A DNA stretch of 64,000 bases from Styela clava (Eukaryota). Shown in pieces: positions 27,008-48,967 of the stretch. The translations under genes were made by a program, and so were the position numbers. The stretch is taken from positions 19,902,001 to 19,966,000 of the forward strand of contig NC_135259.1 of NCBI RefSeq assembly GCF_964204865.1, given 5' to 3'. The notes under the pieces are model-generated. The model had not been told where the DNA came from, searched no databases, and was given only the letters and a program-made list of their open reading frames with translations. Within the stretch, counting starts at the first letter, position 1. Every line of letters starts with the position of its first letter.

Positions 27008-29081
27008 TATGGATTCGTTTTTGGATAGAATGATATACTCTCATATACATGATAAATCAATACAAGACAAGATCAAGCAAATATGTAAAATCCTATGAAA
27101 ATAAAAAGTAGGCAGGTTTGACTTCTTGTGTTAGCAATTAACAAATAGGTATCAGGGGGATTGCTACTAAATCAGAGACCAATATGATACTATGATAAAT
27201 AGCAAAGAAGGCTGTCATTCAAACAAAAAGCCATTTTTTCGAATTCAATCTTCTTTAACGAATCCTTTTTGGCTTTCTCAAGCTGTAGTACTGAAAACAA
27301 AAGTAAAAATAAATATTGTCGCTCGCAGGCCAAAACTAAAGGTTGCAAGTCATTGGCGGGCCGCACATATTTCATGTCATTTGTCTAAATTATAATTAAA
27401 TTAACGAGTAATTGTGAATTGTATACTTGTTACGTTATAATATAATTTAGTCTACACATAAATTCTTTTGCGTAAAGAATATAATCGACAGAACAGCTAT
27501 AATTTGTTACTATAATTCAGTTAAGCGTCGCGGGCCGTAGGGTGCCGACCCCTGCTCTATGCAATAGCATCTGGTAATTTATATTCTACTTATTGCATAT
27601 TTTGGTTTTCTGAACTGTTTACTGGCAACAGTAATTTATTTGCTTAGTCATACTTGGCTTGGTTTTATTAGAGTCATGTTTTGTTGGTGGTTATCATTTC
27701 AGTGCGTACTGCTTTAAGGTGCTGGATTTGTTTGTGAAGTAATCCACTTAGTTTAATTTCCTTTTATTTTCCGAATTGTATAAACTATAAATATATTGCT
27801 AGAACCAAATCCAAAATTGGCAAAACAAAATAAAATTCAAAATAGCAGCAGGGAAATATATAGAAAATGGCCATAAACCATAAACTAACAGTCTACAGCT
27901 ACTGACCCATTTCCGAGCACCACTAAAACTGTGTACCAATGGCCGTCCTCTTTGGTCTCCTGTTCTTCAAGATTTTTGATGTTTGCGATAGCAATTTTGA
28001 ACTTTTCTGAATGATTCTCTGCTAGTTTGTTCAGAGCACCTTCGAGATCCCCCGCACTATATATGCCATGAAGCCATGGAGGAGTAGCTTGATTGTTTTA
28101 AGTACATATAAAATCTTCTCCACTGAAAATAAATAAATTTTGACTCCTGTTTCGCCAAAATTCACATTTTTGAAAAATATCTGAGTGAATTATGTTTCAC
28201 TAGTATGAGAAAGTGATGGTGAGAGTGGCAATAATCATCCGCAAGAAGCATAATAAAACGACAACGAACAATACTCTAACTCAGGGCTACTCAAATATTT
28301 TCATCAAAGGTCCGTACTCAAAATTTAAAAATTACCGGCGTCCTGTCATTCCAAGAATATTTTTTTTAGCTATGGAACAAAATTACAAATGCATCGTTTG
28401 ATAAAATACAGTAGCGAGGCTTAATATCACGCTTCAGTGTCTGTATCTTCAGTTGTGAAGCAGAGCGTGTGAAATATATACCGTATATGGAATATTTATA
28501 AGCTACAAAAACAAGCTAATGTTTACCACCTTGTCTAATAATCCGCGAAAAATATATCCAACCACTAAAACTTTAATTTTTATGTCGGAATTGACATCTT
28601 CTTGATCAGTCACAAAAGCTCTAGGAAACTTATATTACAATGACAATTTTTCCACAGTCGTTTAGCGAAAAATGCATTACATCACGATTGTGAAATAAAA
28701 AGAAACGATGCATTCGAAGTCAAGAAGCAGCTTCGGTCCTAATTTAGCACTCGGAAGGTGCGGAAAGGTTCGCCAGTTGGATAGCCCTGCTCAAACTTAC
28801 TCATCTCATCGATACTCTTCCATTGGGGTGTTTTGCAATCCAACATTCTTGTGATTTCATCGAAATATGATTTTAGTTCTTCGTTTTCCGGTCTGATTTT
28901 TCCTATAACTAAGAGAAGAGCACAAAATTTTAGAAATATTGAGATGATTGGATAAAATTAGTAGGCTTTGAAATATGGGTGAATGAATATTTTTTTTAAT
29001 AAAATTAATATACCCTGGCAATCCTATTATAACTGTAACACCATGGTGCAGTGATTGTACCCAATTAGTTGATGTCACGGC

Positions 29082-31326
29082 CAGTGGCGCAACCAGCGGG
29101 GTGGTTACGGGGGTCGTGTCCCCCCGTTTTAAAGTTTTTTTTTTCATTATTGTTCTACGTTCAAACAACGTCGTTCTACGGACATAACAATCCGGTGAAA
29201 ACTACTTTTTTCCAGTGCTTTATCACCTCGACGTAATTTAACACTGCCCGACTTCAATCATACCTTTTTGCTGTTAGTTACGTAATAATCGCTATCCCCA
29301 CGTATATGTTTGTATTCGAAAATGAGATATGTTACCTCAAAAAAGTAGAAATCGCGCGCTGTCGATGCGAATTGAAAGCGACAATAGCATAATGCTATCT
29401 TTCTCTCTCTTGTGACGAATAATCTCGTGCTTCATCATCTTGACGCAATGTAACGCCGCTCGTCTTCATGTTATAATAATGCAGTAGAAACTCTGAAAAT
29501 CTGGATACGGAAATTATTTTCGGAAAAATATTGTTTCGATTAACCTAAGATTTTCTACATATGAAAGGCCGAAAACCGAAAACGCCGAACACATCCTAAA
29601 GCCCCCGTCCACGTTCAGTTTTAAAAACATTTCACAATTATTTCATTTTTTATCGCAATCGAAAGCAGTATGTGTGGCACGGCAATAACTAACAGTCGTC
29701 GTGAAAGGTTTTCAATAAACTCCTACTTGAAGTGCTTATAAGACGTCGAGGACGTTTTTGGTTAAAAATTTTTTACATTTGTTATCGTATATTTCAATTT
29801 AGTCAAGATATGTTGTGCGCCTCAGCAATAAACTTAAAAGCAAATCCTGCCCTAATCAATTGTTTTCATCCTCAGTTTCGATAGTTATCGAACTTAACGG
29901 GAAATTTTTTAATTTCTTGCAATCTATAAAATAGCTTCTAAATATTATTTGGTTTGTATTGGAAATTTTATCGTTATCCCGACGTCGTTGATAACACTAT
30001 CTTCCATTTTAGGTTGGAGGTATTGGTTTATAATCAAAAAATTGTAACACATAACATGAAAAATTTAAATCAACGCCGACTCGTTTTTTCATCTTTATCC
30101 TCCATTATTGGCGGACGGAAATTTGGGAATCGGGTTTAACTAATTTGATTATGATGACGATGGTAAGCAAAAGTACACAAACATACCGTACCGTTCTTAG
30201 TTTTTAGTCGTTATTTCCCTGCCCTTTCTTCTTTCTATGTGCATATTAAGACCATAAAACCTGTTTTATTTTTGAACTCTGTGCTGATTTGGATACTTCA
30301 TGTCGGCTGTTATGTATTTTTGTTTGTAAATGAATACCGCTAACTTAAACTGAACGATGTTGTCATCAATGCCGGATGCCGACGAAATCCGCGATAGATA
30401 TTAAATATTATTTGAGAGCTATCTTATATGCGCTGAATTACAATAAATTTAAAAATTCCCTGTTATGTTCGGTCACTATCGAAACTGAGGATGAAAACAA
30501 CTAATTAGGACACAATTTGCCGAGGACGCCTAAACCATCTCGACTAAGTTAAAATACACGACAAGAAAATATTTTCAATCAAAAACGTCCTCGAAGTCTT
30601 ATAAGTTCTTCAAGTCGGCGTTTATCGAAATTCTTTCATGTCAGCTGTAATATATTGCCGAACCACACATGGACGATGACGCTAGGATATGTGCGCCATA
30701 TTCGGGATTGTTATAAACACGAAAAAACAGTATTCGAAGTTTGCGATATTTGAATTTAAATTCGATTTGAACATCCCTGCATTAAATTAGTCAGTTTTTA
30801 GTTGTGGTTCCAAAAAATTAGTTGTAAATTAATTATTTTAATTGTCATTATGCCTTCCGGTGAGCTTCAGTTTAGTTTAGAATTTTTCTGGGGTTAGGGT
30901 CGGGAAAAGGTCCATTCGCAAGAAGTGCATTTTGTTTTTAGTCTTGACGAATTCACCCAACGAGCATGGCGCGGCACGAGGGAAACACTGGAATTCATTC
31001 AAGCCGTGTTTCACTATCCACGAGGCGCAAAGCGAGGGAAACGTTGAAAATAGTTAACAGCTTTTCGTTAGCAATTCGCTGGAATGTAATGAATGGTGTT
31101 TTGCTACCCACGAGATGCAAGACATAGCGAAGCGCCGTTAATGAACGAGGGCAAGATAAGCGAAAGGCTGGGATTTAATCGATGGCGTTTCCCTTTTAAC
31201 CACGAGCAATTTATCGTGTTTCAGTGGGGCGACACCTAGTGGCGTTGCGACTTACGTCGTGGTTGCACTGTGTAAATTCCGGTCGGACCCCTCCCCCCCG
31301 TTGAAAACGGCCTGGTTGCGCCACTG
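29082..31326. mobile_element. 2.2-kb non-autonomous hAT-type element with internal foldback
   Basis: TIR CAGTGGCGCAACCAG / CTGGTTGCGCCACTG; 8-bp TSD GTCACGGC; no long ORF; internal inverted arms at about 29672-29950 and 30400-30669. Confidence 0.85.
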
Positions 31327-31815
31327 GTCACGGCACAAATATTTCGGGCTCAAACCCCACCACTTTATTTGGAGTATATTAAATTGGGTGATTATTGGGT
31401 AGTGCCGAGCGAGAAAGATACTGGTCCTCCATTAGCAGCTTATTTCTTAGTAAATAGTTGCTTGCAGTCAGTTTTGCTCAAAGTGAGAATGACTATTGGA
31501 GCCATAAGTTAGTAGGAGATTTCTTGAGTGGTTTAGAACTCTCAAAAAATGTTTTTTAGGGCTCTTCAGAAGTTTATGTACCAATATGGAGGTAACTAAT
31601 CTTGTTTGGCTATTTTACATCAAGTTGTGCAAAGGGACTGAAACCTATGGGAATGAGGGAATAGAACCGAAATAAGGAAAATCAGATTTAAATTATGGCA
31701 TAATCCTAACCTGGCACGCACAGCACAAGAATATCAGAATTAGCGTCAAAATTCGACTGAAACTAGAGATTCGATCGTGCCACAGCTCTGGTTTTTCCAT
31801 ATCATCAAAATTTAC

Positions 31816-32053
31816 GATACTCCCGAAGTAGGCTAAGTAGGCTATGTGATTTAGGATGGCGGACACCAGAACGTAGTATGTGTACCAGGTTAGGGTCCGG
31901 CCATAATTTCAGGTACAAATACTACAGGAGTCACTTGGCTAGTCCCAGAACTCGATATAGGAAAAATTGGAATGAAATTATGGCCTAACCTTTGCCTGGT
32001 ACTCATACTATGTTCCGGTGTCCGCCATCTTGGTTCACATACTTCGGAGTACC
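31816..32053. mobile_element. Palindromic MITE family B (~235 bp, long TIRs, TTAGGG-like motifs)
   Basis: Long TIRs TACTCCCGAAGTA..GATGGCGGACACC..GGTTAGGG. Other copies at about 18863-19057, 19158-19265, 20682-20877, 22320-22495, 53455-53654, 54323-54558, 56190-56344 (TSD TAAAAATG). Confidence 0.85.
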
Positions 32054-33659
32054 GAGGATTGTTATCCACTGATATTCAAATGATATCACAAGATTATCAT
32101 CCAAATAATATAAAATATCATACTTTTAAATAATAATTCGGCTAACTCCCTATTTTTAAGTTTCTCTGGAACCCATTCAGGAACCCTAAAATCCAATATT
32201 CCACTGTTTCTGAAATCATCACCTAAAATGACGAAAAATTAACTTAGATTAAATTAGAGTGTGCACGCATGTCTAAACCATTAAATTTAGCTATGATAAT
32301 GCAAAGATAAAAAAAAGATTGTTGTTTTCCCATGTAAACAGCTTGTAAGGCGAAATCTGACTTTTGTGAGACAGAACGTTACAGAATAGGATTTACAGAT
32401 TCATCTCGGGAGAGAGGAAAGTCAATAACACGGTTCAACCATATGACGAACCACGGCCTTTCATCCGGTTACCATTCCATGTCTTACAAGCGTGATACAT
32501 TCAATATAACTGTTTTGATCCTTGCCATAGGCTGTATCCTTGCAGTCAATGCATACAAATCCACTATCCATAGGGGAGCACTTCTATAATCAATCATATA
32601 TGCTTACCACTATTTTTATATATTTTTAATAAAAGTAGAATATTATATCTGACTATCATATGCTAATCCCTTGAAAAACATATTATCGATAAATTTGACC
32701 ACAGTAATTATTCTTAAAATTAAATTGATAATGTTTGAATCCCAAATCAGATATAACAGAATCAGACTTACCTTCAGGCACTGACTTATCTAATTGAGGC
32801 ACATGTGTATTCCAGTCAGTAGCAGCCCTCCCAAGTGTTGTCAATATACTGATCTGCTTCAAAGCATGATCTTGAAATTAAAAAAAATAAGATTAGGATG
32901 GGATTTGGTGACTCAGACATGGAAAAAATCAAAGATCATTTCTCGAGCAAAATTATTTACTTTCATTTACACAATGAAGTGATATAATCAATAAATTTAA
33001 ACTACAGAGCTACCGGTTGGTAGGATAGGTTTATCTTTAGGTCGGACGGGAGAGGAAAGCTGATCATATGGCTTGATCAGAGTCTCTCAAGTATCAGTCT
33101 TTCGTACGGTTAACAGTCTATGTGAGGTATGGGATTAGTTAGCCAGTTATTTGTTTCAGATGCATGAACTTGGCAGAGTAAGTCGCACCGTAAGCGACGG
33201 CATGATGGCAAGCATACTCCTAGCCCTTAGCATTTAATGTAAAGTGTACTCACAAAGCTCAGTCATTTCAACCATATTCCACAGATAGAAATTATTGTCC
33301 AGAGATTGACCAGATTGGAATATTTTCATGAGGTGATTTCCGGAAAGACATTGGGCTTGATCCTCTTGTTTTTCCTCAACAAAGTCGTTGAATAACTCAA
33401 TTATTTTGCCTCGAACTTTCTGAAACTCCATATCCCCATAATTGGGAAATTTTTCATTCACCAATTTGAAAGCCAATGCCCATGCAATAAACACAGCGAT
33501 GAACCTATGTAAGTAAGTACAATAATTAGACTAGTTCAATGGTTCTGTTGCAACCAGGGATGGGGAATTTGAATTGAGTATTCGAATATCGGAATTAACG
33601 TTTATTAGAATATGGGATTTTTGTGTGACATCATGTTCTTCAAATGAAAACTTTGTCGA

Positions 33660-34710
33660 TAAAAATTGTATCTCGTATTGTACAATTTTATGTCATACAT
33701 TGAAAATACTTATATAGAATACTAGTAAATCAAAATACAAATTCACGGCCTCGAAATCCACGCCGAACAGTCGCCGCGATTATGCCACTCGTTGAAAGAG
33801 CCGACTTTTTGAACGAAAAATGATTTTTCTCTTGTGCAAGGTAATCTATCAATGACCGATACGGGCATATTCAAAATGTCTTGCTTTATTAATTTTTTTG
33901 TCTTCAATTTAACCTGCGGTTGCGTCGACAAAACATGAGCCACTCTAAAACCCCACGGCAATCCGCGACTTGAAAATGTGTGGCAAACTGCCTGGATTAT
34001 ATATTGTTTTGATCTGTATTTTTGCTATCTTGTGAATTCGATAAATTTGAGATGTACTTGTAACACTGACTCCGCTCAATCGCAATGTTGCCACTCTGAT
34101 TATTTTTAAAGATAGAACCTTTCAAGAAATCAGTAAATCTGCTGTAATTATCTTATACATCATCACAAGTTGAGGAAAAGTCACGTTCTCCACCATATTT
34201 AATGTTAACACCAAAATTTTCGACATCAATTTTATAGTAATAGATAAAAAGGCAAATATCGATATAATTAACCGTGTTTCTATTTTAGTGACGATATGTT
34301 TCTAAACGCCAACCAAACAATTTTGCGATTTTTGATGCCTAGAAAAGCGTTTTTAGACTGTTGCCGGGCTTAACAAAACTTATATTGTTTACGGTTATTA
34401 ATTTTTAGTATTTTATATTGGCGCCTCTCAATCAAAAATATAGGTCTCGGATTTACTCCTTCATTTGTCTTTAGAATCTCACGGCGATGAACTTATAATA
34501 ACTGTCACTGGATTCATAATTCTATGTGAGTACAAAAATAAAATAATTATCATCGTTATGGTGGCACAAATTTTCTACAAATTTGTGATTTAGAGAGTAG
34601 AAAAGCCACTGTGAAAGCGTTTATGGCCTGAACACGTCATGAAGATGAAAACAATTAAACGATTTTAGCAAAAAGCAATTACACGCGTTATTGGCGACTT
34701 TTTCAGTTTA
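33660..34710. repeat. ~1-kb dispersed repeat, inverted copy at ~42545-43560
   Basis: For example GAGCCGACTTTTTGAACGAAAAATGATTTTT (33799) versus AAAAATCATTTTTCGTTGAAAAAGTCGGCTC (~43420). Colinear inverted similarity extends over about 1 kb; boundaries are approximate. Confidence 0.8.
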
Positions 34711-36787
34711 TTACATAAATTTTTAAAAGGGGGGTTTCGACCCGGAACCTATTCCCCTGCTATGGAACTTACCCACACTCGTTCCGTCCTTGTTCCCTGG
34801 AGTTTTCGTGGTAGTAAACGTCAAAAGGTGTTTTTTCCTTCAAACGTGTTATCATATCCAGTACCTCCGGGCTCGAAGGTGGAGAATCGCAAACCAGGAT
34901 CATTCTGCAGATGTTAATTAGTAAAAATTGATGAACGGAAAATAAAGTACAAGTGTTAACCTAACGGTTATAATCTTCAACCCGCTCGTGTTCACATTTC
35001 AAGTGAACGGTCTTGAGTTCGACCCCCATATCTCACAAGACAGGTGAGAGATATTAGGATGAAGACGTCTGATCCACTTTCTAATTGCCATTAAATGTAG
35101 TCCAGGAATTAGGAAATAAAATGAAGTAAAAATTGTCATTTGAATGGATTTCTTAATAGAAACTACTCAGACATATGGAAAAACTATAGAGGGCTATTAT
35201 GATACCATAATGAAAACAGGATAGAAAAAGAGATTAACGTGAGGTTGATATATGAGCAATGATTTACACTCAATCAACATCCGTTGCTCTTCTAGTAAGT
35301 AGTATTTCGGTGAATCTCCAGTCCTATCTTTTCCCACATACCCTTTCATTGCCTTTTGTCTTTGAACCAGTTTAAAGAACTCCTCCAGACTAATTATATT
35401 TTCTTGGTTTCTTGTTGATGAAGAAGGTTGAGGGCTGAAAAACAAAAGCGTTAAACAAAAGATAACGAAATAAATGTGTTATTCCTTATTATATTTTTCA
35501 TGACGTTTACTTGCTTTGAACAAGGCCCAGTACAAGCAGTCACTGATATCCTGCAGGGCATCGTGTCACCCATTGAATAGTTACAGAGTTCAACAAGCTT
35601 ATCCCGAGGCGTAATAAATTAGGTAATCAATGCAGAATCATATTTAAGGATTTTAAGTCAAAAATACTACAGAAAAGCGAAATGTTAGCATAAACTTACC
35701 CATCTCCCGCACTTTCCTCTCTAGTATCCCCTCTAGGCTATAAATTGAGAAATAGAATTTTATAAGTTGATTACAAAACAAATAGAGCACAGCAATTCAG
35801 GTTTGAAACACTGTAATTACTGGAAAATTAAGAAAGAGACAATCGCAATTGAAATCACACATACTAGTACACATCTAGCGTACTAATGAAAATGGTAGAT
35901 TTCAGATTTCATTGGATACCAAACAAATTGAAATAAAACTTCAAAACATAATATTCTAGACTAGTAAGGATTAGACCAGTTAGGTTTGGTCTTACTATAG
36001 TTCAGTAGATATTGTTTATTTGTGATACTCTGCTTATAACGAACAAATTGGAATAAAACAAACCCAACAGTTGAAAAAACTATCAAGACGTAAACTCGTA
36101 AAGTTTAAGAGGAAAATGTATCTGCTCATCTATTCAAACAAAGCATTTTATTTAGTAATAAAAATTGAAATTTTCAGAAAACTGAAAAAATTCTGGGATT
36201 TCAAAGTCTGAAGCTGCTCACATTCACAACGAAGGGATTTCCATAATGTGCAGGGTTCATTTTCAAATCCTTCAGATTCCAAGACTTCAAGACAACCAAA
36301 ACTGTAGATCTCCGGATCTTTGGATCTAGTGTACAGTTGATGAGATCTGGTTGAATCGTCCCAAACACAGTAACTTCATCATATTAGAGGTAATTTAGAT
36401 TAACATGAAAAACATTGTAAAAATAATTAAAAACAGAAAAATACCAATAGATATGATAATACAGTATGGTACACTATCTAAATTCCAAGAATTTCCCTCC
36501 ATTTGGTCCAATAAAACAAACACTTTCATTGAATTCTCCATTTTAAATTTAGGTTTGTTATGGAGTTTTCGAAATAAACTATCTATCTATCTATCTATCT
36601 AAATTCCATTTTTAACCACTGAAAATTTCAAAGCAACTGGTCCAGTAATCAAAGAGAGAAGCGATTTCTTAAAAACGTGTCGAAGAACAAGAGAGCAATG
36701 CTCAAATATATAGACACGCAGACAATTCCCCAAAAATCATATGCAGTGACTTACCAGTACCTGTATCGGGGTACGGTACAGGGACTG

Positions 36788-39619
36788 CAGTGTTGCCAAC
36801 TGTTCGGTGCTAAAATAATCTAGAATCTTCACAAAAAATATCTAGAATAATCTAAATTCAAAAAATAATAATCCAAATAATAATCCAAAAATACCAAAGT
36901 TACATTTTCAATGAAAAAACGAAGATTGTAATGTAAAGAAAAATGATTACTCATATCAATACAGCTTTTCGAACATAAGTAAGGTAACTTAAGTATTTAT
37001 CATGAGAAAAAATGAAAGCTTGTTGCACCACAATAATTATGGATTTACTTTTTAGTGTCTGCAATCACCGAATATCAAATACACTAATAAAAAAGAAACA
37101 ATATACAAATAACAATATTTATGAAGTAAATAGAACATTGAATTTTACTGTAATTTGGTTCCTTTGTCTCGAAATAGGGATACTACTAAGTTCACACAGC
37201 ATAATTATCCGTGTGATACAGGTCATTTAATATTTTAATTAATTATAAGCAAGTTATGCGACTACATGTACACTTTTGAAACTGTAACAGAAATTACAAG
37301 TACAAACTACAACTGTTGCAATTCTCTAAAGTTAATATCTTCTACATATGAAAGATCTATGGGATGAGATGCTGAAGTTGACTGGCTCTGATATTGGTAG
37401 ACAGCGCTTGTTCCTATCTCTGCAATGACTTTTGGTGGATACTTGTAAGTGGAGCAGCACTCTTCTTTTCTTATCAACCCAAATTTTACAGTTAAGATGG
37501 CATTCAGCAGCTGCAGTGACATTCTGTTTCTTGGTTTTGACTTGACATAATTCATTGCACTAAATACTCTCTCAATTTCAGCATTTGAATGAGGTAGAAT
37601 TAGGGCTGAAATTGCACACTGGAAAAGTTCTAAAAATGGATTGCATCCTGAAGCATCCCTATAGTCACCCACTTCACTCCAAAAGGCTTCTGTATCATCC
37701 TTATGCACCCAGTCCACAAGATTTATCTTGCTTAGTTGGTATTCTGCTTGAGAGATAGATTGATCAGAGGCCCCCAAAAATTTCATAACTTCACAGATGG
37801 CAGCTTTGTCTTTAAGTGGTTGAAGCATGTTAATAACAGAGAAGCAAGAAATGTTCTGCAGAACTTTAAGATTATCAGGTAGACGCTGCTTTAACTGTTT
37901 ATGCAGTGCCAGTAAAAAATCACAGCATCTTTTTCTTATACAAGTTTCATCAGTATTGGTAAGTTTATTTTGCTTCTTCAAATCTTGAATTTTCCACTCA
38001 AATCTGTAGCCTAAGTATGGTTTTGGGTCCAGATACTCTTCAATGTTAGAATTAAGTAGATCAATATTACAGGTTGGAGATACAAGCTTTTTTGCAATTG
38101 ATTTCATCAGCATTGTTAGATTATTTAATAGTTTCACTTTTTCAATGTTTTTGGATTCAAACAGTTTGTTTACTTGTTGTACTTCAGTCAAAATTGGACT
38201 TAGAAACAGAAGGAAGGCCAAATTTTTTTCATCTGAGTACATTTCATACAGAACTTCTGCAGTATAGCACTTTTCTGACAATCGTGAAACTTCAAAGTGA
38301 GTTTTTAGTTCCAGCCATTGTTCTAAGATTCTTTGAACAGCTGGTTGAATAGATAACCATCTTGTTTGACAATCTTTAGGAATTTTCAAAGGTGATGTGC
38401 CATCATTCAAAGTTTGATACAGAGTCTTATACCGATATTGCCTGGTAGATGAATGTGAGAACCATTTATGTGTCTCGGTAATCAAAAAATTAAGGTGTCT
38501 TGGCAGGCTATCTGCCGATGCTTGTGAGACTGCCAATTGAATAGAATGGCATACACATTTTATAAGAATAAGGGATGGTATCTCGGCCCTCAGTTGTGCA
38601 TGAACACCCTTATTTATGCCAATCATCACACTCGCATTATCTGTTCCAATTGCTACAAGATTCTTCAGACTCAATTTATGTGAACCGAGTACGTTCTTAA
38701 TAGCTATAACAATGTGCTGAGCATCACAAGCTGTAAGTTCAGTAAGTTCCAGATAGGTTGACACAATCTTTTTTTCAGACATGCTGTAATAAACTATAGA
38801 TATGCCTAGTAACTTATGTACTGTTATGTCTGTGGACTCATCTATCAGAATGCTAAATCTGCCATCACCAATATCTCGTCTTAGGTCTGTTTTAAAATGC
38901 TCACACAGAGTATTTCTTATGATATGGGTACATTTAGTTCGGTGCATTTTCATTTCAGACACTGTTTTGTTTGTAGGGAGATTTCTTTTACATAAATCAA
39001 CTAAATGGTCGCAATTAGAAATAGCTGAGTGGCAACATAAAAATGTGGAAATAGACACTTCCAGCTCTGCTGTTTCAGAGTTTTTAATAGTCATAAATGG
39101 ATCAAGAGTCCTGGTAGTGAATGGACAAGCTTTCAAATGTTTCTGAGTTTTAGTATGCTGCTTCAAATCTTGATATTTTGCTTTGACATCACATTTACAG
39201 AACTTGCAGAATGCCTTAGATGCATCAGCAGCCACGGGCGCTATCCACTCTTTCAGTGAGTCATCTTTTAGCCACTGTTTTCGTAATTTCTGGTCGTATC
39301 GTTTGCCACTGGTTTCTTTAGACATATCTCCCTTGTCTGCTTGTTGTTTTGAGCACTATCACTGCAGTACCTTTTCTGTATTTATTCTCTACATATGTTA
39401 TTCACTGCTATAGATACCGGTGAACTGCACTTCACTTCTTTGCCACTATACAGCTAGAGAACAATGCAAAATAATATTTGTCAAAATAATCTAAATATAT
39501 CTAAATGAATGCTAAAATAATCTATAAAATAATCTAGCATCTAAATGGGTATTTCTTACATCTAAATCATACGAAAATAATCTAAATCTAGATTTAAATA
39601 ATCCAAGTTGGCAACACTG
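36788..39619 (-). mobile_element. Autonomous-type hAT DNA transposon (2832 bp)
   Basis: Perfect 14-bp TIR CAGTGTTGCCAACT / AGTTGGCAACACTG; perfect 8-bp TSD AGGGACTG; AAATAATCTA subterminal repeats at both ends; intact transposase ORF. Confidence 0.96.
37307..39325 (-). CDS. hAT-family transposase (ZNF862-like), 672 aa
   Basis: N-terminal zinc finger (CKFC...H..TQKH), IDESTD, GTDNA, CVCH, TRWLS, and C-terminal dimerisation region SNAEIERVFSAMN..K...RNRM. Confidence 0.93.
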   Translation of the reverse strand: MSKETSGKRYDQKLRKQWLKDDSLKEWIAPVAADASKAFCKFCKCDVKAKYQDLKQHTKTQKHLKACPFTTRTLDPFMTIKNSETAELEVSISTFLCCHSAISNCDHLVDLCKRNLPTNKTVSEMKMHRTKCTHIIRNTLCEHFKTDLRRDIGDGRFSILIDESTDITVHKLLGISIVYYSMSEKKIVSTYLELTELTACDAQHIVIAIKNVLGSHKLSLKNLVAIGTDNASVMIGINKGVHAQLRAEIPSLILIKCVCHSIQLAVSQASADSLPRHLNFLITETHKWFSHSSTRQYRYKTLYQTLNDGTSPLKIPKDCQTRWLSIQPAVQRILEQWLELKTHFEVSRLSEKCYTAEVLYEMYSDEKNLAFLLFLSPILTEVQQVNKLFESKNIEKVKLLNNLTMLMKSIAKKLVSPTCNIDLLNSNIEEYLDPKPYLGYRFEWKIQDLKKQNKLTNTDETCIRKRCCDFLLALHKQLKQRLPDNLKVLQNISCFSVINMLQPLKDKAAICEVMKFLGASDQSISQAEYQLSKINLVDWVHKDDTEAFWSEVGDYRDASGCNPFLELFQCAISALILPHSNAEIERVFSAMNYVKSKPRNRMSLQLLNAILTVKFGLIRKEECCSTYKYPPKVIAEIGTSAVYQYQSQSTSASHPIDLSYVEDINFRELQQL

Positions 39620-42600
39620 AGGGACTGTCATAGATATTTTGGGTCCTGTGACAATGATTCATTCTTCTTGATTATATTGAAATATCTCGTGCTATGAGTC
39701 AATTTTGTACGTACCCGGTATCAGGTACCACAGTCAAACATTTCACATAAAAACGTTACTAAATAATAGGGATGGGACGAGTCCGGCATTACAGAGATTC
39801 AACGAATCCGAGTAATAGGTCAAGGACTCGAATCGAATTTTCCGAGTCCGTGACGTCACAATGGAAAACCAGAAAAACACGTTTTTGACCATGCTACAGC
39901 ATCGTGCGCTCACAGACATATGTCATAGCACATCTTTTCTGCCTAATGGTTCCGCAGAAAGCTGTTGAATCATTTTAAAAATATATTTTTCTCTTTTTTA
40001 GGCGGCCATAACACAAACGTAAACGTGGGTCAATGTGCACCTTGGCTGTGAACTGGATTTCCAGCCCGCCACCTTGCGTCAATTCTGGGCGGCTATTCAG
40101 AAATTCTTACATGTAAATATGAAAAATAAAAAGCTTTTGATTATAATGCATTCACATAATTCCAGATACCTCTAGCTGTAAATTTACTATGCCACGTGCA
40201 CAAATGGTAGAGAAATGCCACACATCGTCAAAAACTCAAAAATATTGCGCTAACACATATTTTATTGTGTACCACATGTATACCAAAAAGTATATATAGT
40301 TCAGTAGTTTGAAGGCGACTGGCGCAACATCATTGTTATAAGCAATCAATAGTTTTTAACTTGCGTTATATTATCTGGATATCTGTCGACGTTTTTATTA
40401 GGAGTGTTCATAATACACACGAGTGATATTGTTACATATCCAACCATGAATTACAACTAGGTAAGGTATGTAGTGAGATTTATAGTGGCAAAAGCACAAA
40501 TATAGGCGTAAATTAGTAAAAACAGAATTAAATATAGAGTCCCCTCCCCGATATGCGTTCACGCCACATTTACGATCACTACCTTTTGACACTCTATTTT
40601 GGCCAAACTAGAAACAGTGAAAGATTCCCGCTAGGTATACATATTCCATACCTACTCGCCTACCCACAGATCGCTTCTCGTCAAATTTTGTCCAAAAATG
40701 AGATTATTCTATTCGTCGCCGGAGTAATGAGTCTCTATCTTTATTGCATCGCAGATAATTCCACGTGTGAAAAAAGGCGCTCGCGATTTCCACTTTGGTC
40801 ACATTTGCGATCAAGTATAAATGTATGATCGAGACCCGAGTGAAAGCCCCTTTACTTCGAATGGTGTGCCTAGACAACGTATCAAGAAAACTCCAAAATA
40901 TAATAAAGCTCTTATTCTTCACATTATTCGTTTTCAAAATATTGCATGATATGTAGATTTCCGAAATTAGATCACATCTTTCCCCACAATCAATTTATAA
41001 ACAATCACTGAGCGGTCAATAACGTAATAAATCATATTTACCTGCCCTGTATTTGCCGTAGGTTACACCAACCATGAATGAACCTCTGAATGTTTCTTGT
41101 TGATTTAAACGTTTAAATGACCGATCTCATGATTCTTAATGTATCAGCGCCAATGTCAAATTTCATTCTTGTTAACAAAATTTTATACGAGCACCATTTG
41201 TAATTATTTAAATTAATCAGTTTAGGATTTGACATAATTGCAGAGCATATTGGGAGTCATCGAAAATATAGGTTTTGCCTCTCATTATATTGAATAGCAA
41301 TGCGTTTTGAGCGCAGAAATAAATTTGATAATATTGTTCTCTGCAATGTAAACATACCGGCCTTCTACCGAAAGATTAAGATTTTTGTACACATCGCCGT
41401 GATGGGGCGAAGAGATGTGCGTAATTTAATCATATGACAAGACAAGGCTGTTTTTCCAGTCACCCACGGGAATCTGTTCGCCATACTGCAATATATACAC
41501 ATGTTGATTGAATACAAACCAGCGTCCTATTGTATCTATTGTAATTACTAATGAAAAAGTAGGGGTATTACTATCGGTTTATTGAATGGACCAAGGTTGA
41601 GTCGCTATGCTATTCAATTTTATTTGTCCCGTGTAGAATCAAATACAGTAATCGGGTAGGGTTAGTGAGATTCGGTTAAAAAAAAAACGTTTGTAATAAG
41701 CTTGTTAGATGACAGTATTCGCGTCAGCACACCCAAAAGCTGCTTTCGCAAACATTTTCCATACCTATGTAGGGTCTAAAACAGAAACGTCGGCGCTCCG
41801 ATTGGCGAGATTTTTGCTGATCGCAAATATACGTTTTTGATCGTAATTGCCCCACTGACAAGGTAAAAGTAGAGGCAGTATAAACGGTTTTCCGGCCAGG
41901 GTACCGGCATGATTTTAAACAGGGGCGGACACAAACTCCCCCCTCCCCCCCCCCCCCCCCCTCCCAATAATGTCGCAACAATTTTAATACATATTGTTTC
42001 TGCCTTACAAAATTATCATTTCCGAAAAGTGCGATAGTCAAGCGCAATTAAACGGTTAATAGTTAACGATATTATAAGTATTTTCTTACAATAATGTGGA
42101 CCAGAGCTCCTTCGGAGGACTTCACATTTTCGTGAAACATGCGCGCCCGCACGGGTAATATTCCGTCTTCAAACGCACCATCGATCACGCGCCACGGTTT
42201 TGCACAACTAATTCATTTTTGTACAATTTCACATGGTTTTCTCATTGTCAAAATCTTTCAATAGTGTTATTGTTGGCACTTGCTAGAGAAGTGAAAGAGG
42301 CAAACTGTATTTCATTACAGCAATTAATTATTATCGCTAAAAAATTAACTAGATCTAAAGTTGTTATAAACAATTTTCACCGCTGGACGTATCTTTTCAC
42401 GTTATGGATTTCGTGCAAGGCCCAGCATAATTTGCGGGCAAAGATCAAATCATTTACTATGTCGAAACGCCTATTCGACTTTTCAGACGACAGAAACTAT
42501 CTAAAAAAGATACCCCCCACCCCTTCTGAATTTTTTTAAAAACTGAAAAAGTCGCCAATAACGCATGCAATTGCCTTTTTCTAAAATCGCCGATTGTTTT

Positions 42601-46477: not shown

Positions 46478-46807
46478 AGACAGAATAAGTACGGTATGCG
46501 AGGAAGATTTGCATAGATTGAAGCATGATTAAGGCATTCAAGGGAGCTCATAAATAAAAATATAATATTTAGGCCAAATTGTTGTACTTTTCGCCGTCGG
46601 AGTGTGGTTCAAGTAACTGCTGGCTGGTCGTGTCTTCTTTCATCATAAATGAATAAATAAAAAATAAAAAATCCTCCTTTGTCCTGCTCAATATCTCCAT
46701 CTAGTGGGAATTGTGTAATTCGACAGGATTTCGCAATCCGTCCACATTTCGTTCACCACAACGCTGTCGTGAGTTCTTCATCGTTTATGCTGAAGATTTT
46801 CACCACG

Positions 46808-48967
46808 ATGGGTAGAAGGCGCAAAAAGGTTCACTTTGGAGGAGATCGACGTGACAAGGGGCATTATAGTAATATTGTAAAGGAAAATCAGAAGTATGTG
46901 GACTATTACAAAGCGCAAGAATGTTTCCCGGAGAGCGAATTTGACGACTTTTTGGCGTCCATGAGGCAGCCTTTGCCAGCGGTTTTCCGGATTACCGGGT
47001 ACAAAGAACATGCTAAACAACTCCTAAGAAAAATGAAAGAGAATCATTTCTCAGGTATCGCCGATATCAAATTAGAAAATAATGAAGTTATTAAAATACC
47101 AAGACCTTTGACATGGTATCCTGATGAATTAGCTTGGCAAACAAATCTCAGCCGAACACAAATTCGTAAAGTTCCTGAGTTGGAAAAATTCCATAATTTT
47201 TTGATCACTGAAACTGAGAGTGGGCATGTCACCAGGCAAGAATCTGTGAGCATGATTCCACCATTGCTTTTAGACGTAAAGCCCCATCATAAGATCTTGG
47301 ATTTATGCGCAGCTCCGGGTTCAAAAACTGCACAACTTATAGAAATGTTGCACACAGATGATGGCGATGACAGCCTAAGTAAAGGTCTATGTATCGCTAA
47401 TGATAAAGATAACAAACGATGTTATATGCTTGTCCATCAAATAAATCGATTAAACAGCCCTGTTTCGATGGTCGTTAATCATGATGGCTCTCAATTTCCG
47501 TCGTTGGAAATTAAAAATGAAGATGGTACAATGTCACCATTAAGATATGATCGTGTTTTAGCGGACGTACCGTGCTCCGGTGATGGTACAATGCGTAAAA
47601 ACACAGACGTTTGGAAAAAGTGGACTGTCAGTAATGGGTTATATTTACATGGTTTACAAGCTCGTTTATTACAGCGCGGACTAGAACTTCTTGCCACTGG
47701 AGGCAGGATAGTGTATTCTACATGCTCTTTGAACCCTATTGAGGATGAAGCGGTCGTCGCAAATATGCTAACAAAATGTAAAGGATCAGTAGAGCTAATT
47801 GACGTGATGGACGAACTCAAGGGTTTAAAATGGAGTCCGGGGATTTCAAAATGGCGGGTGTTGGAACGTGATGGTACTTGGTATAATAATCACACTGAAG
47901 TACCTGAGACAAAATCTCACATCCGACCGAGTATGTTTCCACCTGAAAACGCAGAAAACCTCAACTTGGAGCGATGTATGAGACTTCTACCTCATCACCA
48001 AGACACTGGTGGGTTTTTCGTAGCTGTTTTGAAAAAAGTGGAAAAACTACCATGGGAAAAAGACAGAGAAATCATTGCCAAAAAGCCATTAAAAGAGGAT
48101 GAAAACAAAGAACAGAATACCGAAGCCCCTCCGGCGAAGAAAAAAAAATGGGGCGCTGGTTTCAAAGAGGATCCGTTTATATTTTTCAATGATTCTGATA
48201 AAGAAATTACATCTCAGATTAAGTCATTTTACGCTTTGAAAGATGAATTTCCAGATACACAGTTGTTATCTCGCACAAGTGCAGAAAAAAAGCGGCATAT
48301 TTATATGGTATCTTCTCTTGTTAGGAATATCATTACTAATAACCCCGATCGTTTGAAACTTATTAATTCCGGAGTTCGAGTATTCAGTAGAAGCGACAAT
48401 AACCAACCAAATTTGAAATGTGCATTCCGAGTCGCGCAAGACGGCAGCGAAGTTATTGAACCGTTCATGCAGAAAAGAGTTGTTGATATAAAAATTGACG
48501 ACACGATACTTCTTTTGTGTGAAGAACAACCAGATTATGAAACTTTGTCGGAATATTTGATCAACCAACTCAAAGATTTGGATCCGGGTAGCATGGTGTT
48601 CAAGTATGTTCCTGAAAATGATTCTGTGGCCGTGAGATGCAAGCTATTAATGAGCGGATGGAGGGGGAAAAAATCTGCAAGATTGTACATGAATAAGTAT
48701 GAAAGAGCTCATTTTTTGAATCTGATTGGACATGAAATACCAGAAATGTATCTCCCAAATAAAAATAATCGAAGAAAGAGAGCAGAAAACTCTGACGAAA
48801 CTGGCAACAGTACCCCTAATGATGGCGCTACAGATGAGAATTCAGCTGTGGAAACAGAAGTAGCCGCAAGTACCGACCAAAATGTTGCTGACGGTTCTGA
48901 CAAGAATGGAAAAAATGGTGAAGGAAATGGAGAATTACTCAGTAAGGAAGAAGCTGCTACTGCATAA
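46808..48967 (+). CDS. NSUN2: RNA cytosine-C5 methyltransferase NSUN2 (Trm4)
   Basis: Intronless, likely start MGRRRKK (719 aa). Motifs RQESVSMIPP, DLCAAPGSKT, DVPCSGDG, YSTCSLNPIEDE, PHHQDTGGFFVA, GFKEDPF. Confidence 0.96.
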   Translation: MGRRRKKVHFGGDRRDKGHYSNIVKENQKYVDYYKAQECFPESEFDDFLASMRQPLPAVFRITGYKEHAKQLLRKMKENHFSGIADIKLENNEVIKIPRPLTWYPDELAWQTNLSRTQIRKVPELEKFHNFLITETESGHVTRQESVSMIPPLLLDVKPHHKILDLCAAPGSKTAQLIEMLHTDDGDDSLSKGLCIANDKDNKRCYMLVHQINRLNSPVSMVVNHDGSQFPSLEIKNEDGTMSPLRYDRVLADVPCSGDGTMRKNTDVWKKWTVSNGLYLHGLQARLLQRGLELLATGGRIVYSTCSLNPIEDEAVVANMLTKCKGSVELIDVMDELKGLKWSPGISKWRVLERDGTWYNNHTEVPETKSHIRPSMFPPENAENLNLERCMRLLPHHQDTGGFFVAVLKKVEKLPWEKDREIIAKKPLKEDENKEQNTEAPPAKKKKWGAGFKEDPFIFFNDSDKEITSQIKSFYALKDEFPDTQLLSRTSAEKKRHIYMVSSLVRNIITNNPDRLKLINSGVRVFSRSDNNQPNLKCAFRVAQDGSEVIEPFMQKRVVDIKIDDTILLLCEEQPDYETLSEYLINQLKDLDPGSMVFKYVPENDSVAVRCKLLMSGWRGKKSARLYMNKYERAHFLNLIGHEIPEMYLPNKNNRRKRAENSDETGNSTPNDGATDENSAVETEVAASTDQNVADGSDKNGKNGEGNGELLSKEEAATA

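What the first reader, a model, noticed from the sequence alone, without database searches (positions are those of the whole stretch)
27885..34904. Candidate circularly permuted / exon-scrambled Ulp1-SENP (clan CE) protease
Seen in sequence, in minus-strand transcription order: exon A (34904-34773) encodes MILVCDS...EQGRNECG, followed by FIAVFIAWALA. Five exons later, exon F (28122-27907) encodes ...EDGHWYTVLVVLGN and ends at a good donor (GG|GTCAGT, phase 2). Exon A begins in phase 2, so an F-to-A join reads GHWYTVLVVLGNG-MILVCDS, which places Asp exactly 17 residues after His. Established: in Ulp1 and SENP8/NEDP1 the order is His, Asp(+17), oxyanion Gln, Cys. Here the genomic order is Asp, Gln/Cys, His, cut at the beta-hairpin turn. 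Inference, three options: (i) a true circularly permuted protease from linear splicing, since an upstream donor at 35342 is also phase-compatible with A; (ii) back-splicing or trans-splicing of F to A, where the A-F circle would be 900 nt and stop-free if the 1-nt lesion in F is repaired; (iii) a displaced A-B block from rearrangement or mis-assembly.
Basis: partly seen in the sequence, partly recalled or inferred. Interest (0 to 1): 0.8.

Follow-up and report, generated by a model that had tools for sequence, protein, structure and literature searches.

The report
Rearranged Ulp1-like gene in sea squirt
An expressed gene found only in the sea squirt Styela clava carries the catalytic pieces of a SUMO-type cysteine protease in swapped order, but the resemblance is weak and this copy is cut short by a one-base frameshift.

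Summary
The window holds LOC120342872 of Styela clava, a ten-exon minus-strand gene with ordinary linear splicing.

- **Exon order.** Exons A-B (Asp strand CDS, Gln, NECG helix) lie upstream of exon F (EDGHWYTVLVVLGNG). An older RefSeq protein of the same gene (P0002, 362 aa) reads this order in one open frame. The window copy is one base short in F and stops before the His (P0001, 316 aa).
- **F donor.** That exon gives exactly P0002's C-terminus, so back-splicing is not needed.
- **Mis-assembly.** Two annotated proteins, RNA contigs and DNA contigs argue against it.
- **Clan CE kinship, against.** Pfam, NCBIfam, PHROGs, PDB sequence search and two AlphaFold runs gave nothing.
- **Clan CE kinship, for.** A language-model search put C48 and C57 clusters on top. 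The Cys half beats shuffles against this genome's own C48 profiles (0, 3 and 6 of 2000). The His half does not (142-257 of 2000).

Best reading: a rearranged, probably transposon-derived, permuted Ulp1-like relic, possibly decaying. The scan noted transposon-borne Ulp1 domains elsewhere in this genome, but not this gene.

The parts
36222..36260 (-). Coding exon 1 (MNPAHYGNPFVVN; ATG at 36260), donor GTGAGC.
   Evidence: tblastn of P0001 and P0002; exon boundaries.
35700..35737 (-). Coding exon 2 (PRGDTREESAGD-G).
35342..35434 (-). Coding exon 3 (PQPSS...KAMK-G). Its phase-2 donor is the annotated partner of exon A.
34773..34904 (-). Exon A: MILVCDS...EQGRNECG. It holds the Asp-strand candidate (Asp63 of P0002), Gln95 and Cys100.
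   Evidence: The Cys region aligns to the Q..C helix of C48 profiles.
33254..33504 (-). Exon B: FIAVFIAWALAF...MTEL, i.e. the rest of the Cys helix and the following DM..R-like helix. Read-through of its donor stops at TAA 33236-33234.
   Evidence: RNA contigs cover exactly 33254-33505 (X1 record 8).
32772..32870 (-). Exon C (phase 1 at both ends).
32124..32222 (-). Exon D (DDFRNSGILDFRVPEWVPEKL...). It is the most divergent exon between the two annotated proteins (67% identity). Its Trp aligns with the Trp of the WLND motif in MAFFT alignment A4.
   Evidence: weak hhalign second hit, E 0.81.
28801..28908 (-).
27907..28122 (-). Exon F. The frame coming from E reads MEKILYVLKTIKLLLHGFMAYIVRGISKVL and stops at 28033-28031. 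A second frame reads NNQATPPWLHG...EDGHWYTVLVVLGN, the His-strand candidate. Donor GG|GTCAGT.
28095..28099 (-). Frameshift zone: 5 nt here, where P0002 has two codons (QY).
   Evidence: DNA contig X10 record 9 is identical across it, with no gaps.
27278..27290 (-). Terminal exon G, coding part (T ACT ACA GCT TGA). It follows a strong acceptor (...ttttgttttcag) and gives GNG-TTA*, the exact C-terminus of P0002. Its 3' end is not determined.
   Evidence: Only match to the pattern on the minus strand of the window; boundaries. X1 record 1 ends 30 nt inside F from the donor, as expected for a branch at the donor (inference).

Best explanation
The region is an ordinary, linearly spliced, transcribed ten-exon gene found only in Styela clava (LOC120342872).

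Its product appears to descend from a Ulp1/C48-like (clan CE) protease domain, most like the transposon-borne type of this genome. A rearrangement of exon blocks, with breakpoints in introns, put the Asp-strand/Gln/Cys-helix half (exons A-B) in front of the half that ends in the His strand (exons D-F).

The intact allele therefore encodes a circularly permuted order, Asp63-Gln95-Cys100...His348, cut at the hairpin between the His and Asp strands. The old F-to-A intron boundary survives as the F donor, which now joins a 13-nt terminal coding exon.

In the copy in this window a net 1-nt deletion in exon F ends the protein 30 codons into exon F, before the His. Here the gene can at best make a His-less protein, and it may be decaying.

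**Shown:** the exon order, the splice sites, the two annotated proteins, the frameshift and transcription.

**Inferred:** descent from a C48 domain, the His strand being the displaced one, and the route of rearrangement.
For: **Gene and exon order**
- Exon B finds only P0001 among 1.84 billion representatives.
- P0001 and P0002 are both named 'uncharacterized protein LOC120342872 [Styela clava]'.
- Both map to the window in the same exon order.
- All 10 exons have AG/GT borders, and their total length is 1088 nt, i.e. 1089 minus 1.

**Exon G**
- It is the only pattern match on the window's minus strand and reproduces P0002's C-terminal TTA*.

**RNA**
- X1 record 8 (955 nt) carries 33254-33505 at its positions 296-547.
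- X2 record 24 and X4 record 32 (327 nt each) carry 154 nt upstream of exon B, which equals exon A (132 nt) plus 22 nt.

**Clan CE lead from the language-model search**
- Whole P0002: the first hit is an ElaD cluster that is 98% PF02902, score 0.93, 164 of 256 features. The listed rows also include a cluster 15% PF02902 (0.89) and a C57 cluster (0.88).
- Residues 121-362 alone: Ulp1/C48 0.88, ElaD 0.87, C57 0.87.

**Cys half (residues 57-150) against profiles of this genome's own C48 domains**
- Transposon-type profile: 5.9 bits, reached by 0 of 2000 shuffles.
- Profile of 8 types: 4.6 bits, 3 of 2000.
- Profile of 5 other sequences: 3.9 bits, 6 of 2000.
- hhalign: residues 92-142 align to the Q..C helix plus the following helix, E 0.028.

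**His half**
- MAFFT of P0002 with 11 N-terminal halves of C48 domains puts all 11 catalytic His on His348, and the WLND Trp of 10 of 11 on Trp234.
- The notional F/A boundary gives the family's His-Asp spacing of 17 and matching intron phase.

**Context**
- Earlier scan notes record transposon-borne Ulp1 domains in this genome.
Against: **No curated or solved-structure match**
- No Pfam C48 match, exon by exon or for P0001 or P0002, even at E up to 10.
- PF02902 found 42 places in the genome, none in the window.
- NCBIfam, PHROGs and PDB sequence search gave nothing relevant.

**The His half is not significant**
- Residues 290-362: 142, 257, 196 and 241 of 2000 shuffles reach its score.
- HMMER prefers to align KFKIAIANIK, not HWYTVLVVL, to the His strand.
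- The SENP1-heavy profile does not support the Cys half either (496 of 2000).

**No fold**
- Both AlphaFold runs are unusable: mean pLDDT 37 and 46.
- Foldseek on the second model found nothing at E up to 0.001.
- The Atlas's own model has only thioredoxin-like neighbours, at TM 0.21-0.25.

**Limits of the supporting evidence**
- Language-model scores of 0.87-0.93 are leads. 4 to 10 in 100 shuffled proteins reach 0.9, and the method was not calibrated for parts of proteins.
- A MAFFT match of the single HW of P0002 to HW is nearly forced.
- No relative with the canonical exon order was found anywhere.
- No DNA remnant of a duplication was found.

**Signs of weak constraint**
- 14% protein divergence between the two annotated versions, and a frameshift in this one.
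Confidence: 0.5

Rival explanations
1. Truncated remnant plus unrelated exons. Only exons A-B descend from a C48-like domain, as a 5'-truncated transposon fragment. Exons C-G are unrelated sequence recruited by splicing. The C-terminal HW strand, its spacing and its phase are coincidence, so no triad exists.
For: - The Cys half is significant, but the His half is not.
- The read-through stop just after the donor of exon B (33236-33234) fits B having once been a last exon.
- His-strand-like motifs are common by chance: 13 in the window against about 8 in shuffles.
- The truncated allele lacks the His.
Against: - The part without Asp, Gln and Cys (residues 121-362) still draws C48 and C57 clusters, at 0.87-0.88.
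- P0002 has exactly one HW, placed so that the exon end plus the exon A start gives the family spacing of 17 with matching phase. My rough estimate of the chance of this is about 1 in 1000; it is post hoc and an inference.
- The Trp234 alignment.
Confidence: 0.25
2. No kinship with clan CE at all. This is a young orphan gene, mostly helical, whose short motifs mimic a protease by chance.
For: - All curated-profile and solved-structure sequence searches are empty.
- No homologue outside the species.
- Poor models.
- Best hhalign probability about 2%.
Against:
- Three profiles built from this genome's own C48 domains beat 1994 to 2000 of 2000 shuffles for the Cys half, over a 45-residue alignment.
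Confidence: 0.12
3. Canonical order restored at the RNA level. Exon F is back-spliced or trans-spliced to exon A, giving a circular or scrambled RNA that encodes His-Asp-Gln-Cys.
For: - Phases are compatible all round the A-F circle.
- Tunicates use spliced-leader trans-splicing (my own knowledge, not tested here).
Against: - The F donor has an ordinary partner, exon G, that reproduces P0002's end.
- P0002 needs no such event.
- No F-A joint was seen, although exon A lay outside the laid stretch and the joint tables were swamped by repeats.
Confidence: 0.03
4. Mis-assembly or a private rearrangement: A-B really lies downstream of F.
For: The large, repeat-rich introns (28.9-32.1 kb) could mislead an assembler (depth table).
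Against: - Two RefSeq proteins with different accession numbers and 14% divergence share the same order.
- The lengths flanking exon B in the RNA contigs fit A upstream and C-D-E downstream.
- DNA contigs are locally identical to the window (X10 records 9, 10, 13-16).
Confidence: 0.02
5. The working His is His5 of exon 1 (AHYGN.FVVN), not His348. This would be a linear His...Asp...Gln...Cys protease with a long insert in the hairpin, and the truncated allele would keep all four residues.
For: Both alleles keep MNPAHYGN[SP]FVVN. The order would then be canonical.
Against: - His5 is 58 residues from Asp63, against 17-19 in all 8 types examined.
- No strand is predicted there.
- No profile alignment reaches it.
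Confidence: 0.05

Closest known systems
Ulp1/SENP/NEDP1 proteases (MEROPS C48, Pfam PF02902, clan CE)
   Same: - The Q-x4-C-G motif opens a helix, followed by a helix resembling the family's C-terminal 'DM..R' helix.
- A hydrophobic strand ends in DS.
- An HW strand is preceded by another strand.
- The His-Asp spacing is 17 across the notional F/A boundary.
- C48 and C57 clusters are nearest by language-model features.
   Different: - The order in the sequence is Asp, Gln, Cys, His instead of His, Asp, Gln, Cys.
- There is no PF02902 match.
- About 230 mostly helical residues lie between the Cys helix and the His strand.
- No relatives were found outside one species.
Transposon-borne Ulp1-like domains of this same genome (long open frames at many loci, e.g. 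L024-L035; earlier scan notes call them Zisupton/KDZ or Mutator-like cargo)
   Same: They give the best profile match to the Cys half: 5.9 bits, reached by 0 of 2000 shuffles. They also have a short distance from the WL motif to HW, about 52-55 residues, against 46 from Trp303 to His348 in P0002.
   Different: They have the canonical order in one uninterrupted frame and exist in many copies. The gene here is single-copy, has nine introns in its coding region, and is permuted.
Naturally permuted papain-like deubiquitinases: EmcB/CoxDUB (permuted OTU fold), LupA, and the NlpC/P60-LRAT group
   Same: They are precedent that an internal gene rearrangement can move the Cys helix relative to the His strand and leave an active enzyme (PMC12501173, abstract and passages read; PMC10318531, passages read). 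The latter paper treats its cluster VI, which holds C48, C55, C57 and C79, as papain-like with a permuted helix.
   Different: These are other families, bacterial, and with measured activity. Here the cut would lie between the His and Asp strands of a CE domain. That would put Cys before His, as in papain, but leave the Asp strand first. No activity or structure is known.

Membership tests
Peptidase C48 (Ulp1/SENP), Pfam PF02902 | Match to the family profile above its gathering score. | tested here: not met
   No PF02902 row at E up to 10 for exons A, B, C, D, E, F, for P0001 or for P0002. None of the 42 genome matches lies in the window.
Peptidase C48 (Ulp1/SENP), Pfam PF02902 | Catalytic residues in the order His, Asp, Gln, Cys along the chain. 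| tested here: not met
   P0002 has Asp63, Gln95, Cys100 and His348. All 29 signature-bearing C48 open frames of this genome have His first.
Peptidase C48 (Ulp1/SENP), Pfam PF02902 | Gln/Cys motif at the start of a helix, with family-like sequence around it. | tested here: met
   Weak but reproducible. hhalign E 0.023-0.05. HMM scores are reached by 0, 3 and 6 of 2000 shuffles with three own-genome profiles, but by 496 of 2000 with a SENP1-heavy profile.
Peptidase C48 (Ulp1/SENP), Pfam PF02902 | His strand (HW + hydrophobic strand) homologous to the family's. | tested here: inconclusive
   Not above shuffles: 142, 257, 196 and 241 of 2000. MAFFT places all 11 catalytic His on His348, but that match is nearly forced. 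The part-protein feature search gives C48 at 0.87-0.88.
Clan CE fold | Alpha/beta core with His, Asp and Cys brought together. | tested here: inconclusive
   AlphaFold2 mean pLDDT 37 (single sequence) and 46 (alignment A4). Foldseek found nothing at E up to 0.001. The Atlas model has pTM 0.51 and no CE neighbour.
Clan CE fold | Isopeptidase or protease activity dependent on the Cys. | not testable with these tools
   Needs recombinant protein and SUMO, NEDD8 or ubiquitin probes.
Circular RNA / exon-scrambled transcript | A junction read joining the F donor to the A acceptor. | not tested
The F donor has an ordinary partner, exon G.

The most novel reading that the evidence does not exclude
The intact allele (362 aa) folds into a working, naturally circularly permuted clan CE protease. 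The new ends sit at the hairpin between the His and Asp strands, and the catalytic order is Asp-Gln-Cys-His. As far as my searches show, this would be the first permuted member of the Ulp1/adenain clan, made by exon-block rearrangement in a chordate and still segregating with a null allele.
Probability: 0.15. Interest if true: 0.7.

Novelty: new variant of a known kind. Interest (0 to 1): 0.4.

Why it matters
If the permutation is real, it would show a clan CE (SUMO-protease type) domain surviving a cut between its His and Asp strands. It would also show how: a rearrangement of whole exons that leaves intron phases and a relic donor as footprints.

That would be a rare, datable example of circular permutation in an animal gene. 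It would also give protein engineers a natural template for split or permuted Ulp1, an enzyme widely used to remove tags.

If it is only a decaying transposon-derived relic, it is an ordinary case of exonised transposon sequence in a fast-evolving orphan gene.

Tried and rejected
**Curated libraries**
- Pfam on each exon and on both annotated proteins gave only chance rows: DUF7832, ssDNA_DBD, PTR, NCH4 and EF-hand_8, with E from 0.02 to 0.28.
- NCBIfam gave nothing. PHROGs gave chance rows, with E 0.07-0.34.
- PDB sequence search gave only SLF2, E 0.3.

**Paralogues and relatives**
- tblastn of exons A, B and F against the window found only the exons themselves.
- Whole-genome searches found only the exons themselves, apart from two chance rows for exon B (E 0.09 and 2.3).
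- phmmer of P0002 against SENP-like frames found nothing. blastp of its two parts against all 29 C48 frames gave E of 0.08 or worse.
- PF00770 and PF03290 in the genome gave nothing useful.
- A search with residues 287-362 of P0002 found only P0002.

**Alignments**
- MAFFT of P0002 with whole C48 domains (A2) gave a plainly spurious co-linear alignment. With both half-sets together (A3), only the N-terminal halves were misplaced: their His fell on P0002's 'TDW' and not on His348, while the Cys-side halves put their Gln and Cys on Gln95 and Cys100. Neither was used.

**Structure**
- AlphaFold2 was run twice and Foldseek once. The models were too poor to use. The VIA searches were not run for that reason.

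**Duplication remnants**
- blastn of the region downstream of F against the region around A-B, and of the region upstream of A against C-F, gave only chance matches, E of 0.085 or worse.

**Idea considered and dropped**
- A linear clan CA reading (UCH or USP-like Gln-Cys...His). No feature, profile or family hit points there.

**Reads**
- The read laying tables of joints and loose ends were filled by repeat families at about 31.45-32.05 kb, 32.45-32.65 kb and 33.05-33.25 kb. The exon joints themselves were not displayed.

**Papers**
- Search for 'circular permutation' + Ulp1: 7 papers, 6 listed, none by title on a natural permuted Ulp1 (listing).
- Search for 'circularly permuted' + 'clan CE': 0 papers.
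- Search for 'circular permutation' + SENP + 'cysteine protease': 4 papers, 3 listed.
- The claim that no permuted CE protease is in print rests on these three searches only.
- PMC10318531 and PMC12501173 were read as passages found by 'find'.
- The Styela genome papers were seen as a listing only.
- Supplements were not opened.

Full report
**What is there**

On the minus strand, exon A (34904-34773) reads MILVCDS...EQGRNEC-G and exon B continues FIAVFIAWALAF. Exon F (28122-27907) holds ...EDGHWYTVLVVLGN in one of its frames and ends at GG|GTCAGT. A notional F/A boundary would put Asp 17 residues after His. That is the spacing in 5 of 8 C48 types I pulled from this same genome; the other 3 have 18-19. 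The lesion in F is also real. The frame arriving from exon E runs into TGA at 28033-28031, and the His lies in another frame.

**Which gene it is**

- phmmer of exon B against 1.84 billion representatives found a single protein, P0001 (316 aa, 100% identical).
- A word-indexed search with P0001 found only P0001 and P0002 at E up to 1, among 463 candidates.
- Both carry the source name 'uncharacterized protein LOC120342872 [Styela clava]'. P0001 is XP_077972955.1, on a contig of 22,500,630 bases, which is the length of the window's contig C13. P0002 is XP_039267875.1, with no contig on record.

**Gene model**

tblastn places both proteins on the window in the same linear order:

| Exon | Coordinates (minus strand) |
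|---|---|
| e1 | 36260-36222 |
| e2 | 35737-35700 |
| e3 | 35434-35342 |
| A | 34904-34773 |
| B | 33504-33254 |
| C | 32870-32772 |
| D | 32222-32124 |
| E | 28908-28801 |
| F | 28122-27907 |

- All borders are AG/GT.
- P0002 runs through F in one frame and ends ...EDGHWYTVLVVLGNGTTA.
- Its last three residues are not encoded after the F donor in the window, where read-through gives GNGSVAVDC*.
- A pattern for 'AG + N ACN ACN GCN stop' has exactly one match on the window's minus strand. It sits at 27292, behind a strong pyrimidine tract...ttttgttttcag|TACTACAGCTTGA.
- So the 'good donor' of F joins an ordinary terminal exon G (27290-27278).
- The ten coding exons sum to 1088 nt, one short of the 1089 nt of a 362-codon frame plus stop.
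- The missing base lies in 28099-28095, where P0002 has two codons.

**Reads (one call, 5991 letters, 27650-33640)**

- In three runs guessed to be RNA, from three studies, contigs stop exactly at the borders of exon B and continue with sequence that is not adjacent in the genome.
- X1 record 8 (955 nt, depth 60) has 33254-33505 at its positions 296-547.
- X2 record 24 and X4 record 32 (327 nt each) have 154 nt beyond the acceptor of B, which equals exon A (132 nt) plus 22 nt.
- I could not see those flanking letters, so 'A upstream, C-D-E downstream' rests on lengths and on the annotated models.
- X1 record 1 runs from beyond 27650 up to 27936 and ends there, 30 nt inside F from the donor. 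That is what a 31-mer graph gives at a branch at the donor. I read this as use of the donor in RNA; a SNP at 27906 would look the same.
- The DNA-like run X10 has a contig (record 9) identical to 27650-28390 with no gap. The frameshifted state is therefore in reads, possibly of the same individual as the assembly.
- Exon joints and any F-A back joint were not visible. Exon A lay outside the stretch, and the tables were filled by intronic repeats.

**Is it a clan CE protease? Evidence against**

- No PF02902 row, exon by exon or for either protein, even at E up to 10.
- None of the 42 PF02902 matches in the genome lies in the window.
- NCBIfam, PHROGs and PDB sequence searches were empty.
- AlphaFold2 gave mean pLDDT 37 (single sequence) and 46 (alignment A4), and Foldseek found nothing.

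**Is it a clan CE protease? Evidence for**

- The ESM Atlas feature search of P0002 put an ElaD cluster (98% PF02902) first, at 0.93 with 164 of 256 features. Three of the 30 hits were in that family set. The listed rows also included a cluster 15% PF02902 (0.89) and a poxvirus C57 cluster (0.88).
- Residues 121-362, which lack Asp63, Gln95 and Cys100, again drew Ulp1/C48 (0.88), ElaD (0.87) and C57 (0.87). These scores are leads, not proof, and parts of proteins were not calibrated.
- I built profiles from C48 domains of this genome (29 frames with the His...Asp...Gln...Cys signature). The table gives the number of 2000 shuffles that reach the real score:

| Profile | Cys half (57-150): score | Cys half: shuffles reaching it | His half (290-362): shuffles reaching it |
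|---|---|---|---|
| Transposon type | 5.9 bits | 0 | 196 |
| 8 types | 4.6 bits | 3 | 257 |
| 5 other sequences | 3.9 bits | 6 | 241 |
| SENP1-heavy | -2.3 bits | 496 | 142 |

- The Cys-half alignment covers the Q..C helix and the next helix, 45 residues.
- hhalign gave the same region at E 0.023-0.05.
- The His half was never above shuffles.
- MAFFT of P0002 with 11 N-terminal halves put all 11 catalytic His on His348, and 10 of 11 WLND Trp on Trp234. With only one HW in P0002, that match is nearly forced.

- **(i) fits as to order.** The gene makes, by plain linear splicing, a frame with Asp, Gln and Cys before His.
- **(ii) is unnecessary,** because the F donor has a normal partner.
- **(iii) is unlikely,** given two annotated proteins with the same order and the read evidence.
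- **What stays open** is whether the C-terminal HW strand is the displaced His strand of an ancestral C48 domain (my best reading, about one in two) or a coincidence on unrelated exons (about one in four).
- **For the second reading** speak the non-significant His half and the read-through stop right after B's donor (33236-33234). That stop would suit B as a former last exon, although it also suits a duplication-and-loss route.

**Origin and function**

- The best profile match is to the transposon-borne type. Earlier notes of this scan describe Ulp1 domains on Zisupton/KDZ-like and Mutator-like elements in this genome. I saw such long frames myself but did not check the transposons.
- I found no remnant of duplicated exon blocks and no relative with the canonical order. 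The route of rearrangement is therefore inferred.
- A cut at the turn of the His/Asp hairpin, far from the active site, is a plausible place for viable new ends. This rests on general knowledge of the Ulp1 fold and was not tested here.
- The copy in the window ends before the His, its stop lies about 125 nt before the last exon junction, and the two annotated proteins differ at 14% of sites (exon D at 33%). All this hints at weak constraint.

**Known comparisons**

- PMC10318531 (passages read) groups C48, C55, C57, C63 and C79 as papain-like enzymes with a permuted Cys helix, and lists other natural permutations.
- PMC12501173 (abstract and passages read) shows an active, naturally permuted OTU deubiquitinase and cites the duplication-deletion model.
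- I found no paper on a permuted clan CE enzyme in three searches.

- I did not build or search a joined model or the re-ordered F-A-B sequence.
- Supplements of papers were not opened.

Noticed in passing
window 36755-39631 (minus strand): A hAT-type transposon with a 672-aa open frame (37307-39325; Pfam hAT dimerisation domain, E 3e-5) and inverted ends (CAGTCCCT...GTTGCCAAC). It lies upstream of the annotated start codon of the gene (36260), so not 'a few bases after the start codon' by the RefSeq models.
   Followed up: partly
window 23940-25163 (minus strand): An intronless 407-aa aminomethyltransferase (glycine cleavage T protein; GCV_T E 1.8e-82, GCV_T_C E 1.8e-23), about 2.1 kb downstream of exon G on the same strand.
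   Followed up: partly
window 46679-48967 (plus strand): An uninterrupted 762-aa frame with RsmB/F methyltransferase plus NSUN2 pre-PUA and PUA domains, i.e. an intronless NSUN2-like gene.
   Followed up: partly
window 31450-32050, 32450-32650, 33050-33250: Very high-copy repeats inside the introns. Summed depth reaches 10^4 to 10^6 in the DNA-like run, against about 65 for single-copy parts. Many 'opposite strands' joints occur around 31909-31954, suggesting foldback or MITE-like elements that are also present in the RNA contigs.
   Followed up: no
window 32124-32222 (exon D): Exon D is only 67% identical between the two annotated proteins, while the other exons are 83-95% identical. It holds the Trp that aligns with the WLND motif.
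   Followed up: no
P0004 (Panagrolaimus protein, seen in alignment A2): This C48 protein shows an internal tandem repeat, about 75 residues long, of the segment running from before the His strand to just after the Asp strand. It is either an assembly artefact or an example of the partial duplications from which permutations can arise.
   Followed up: no
window 36222-36260 (exon 1): The first coding exon reads MNPAHYGN[P/S]FVVN in both alleles. This is a His-aromatic followed by a short hydrophobic run, 58 residues before the Asp strand.
   Followed up: partly
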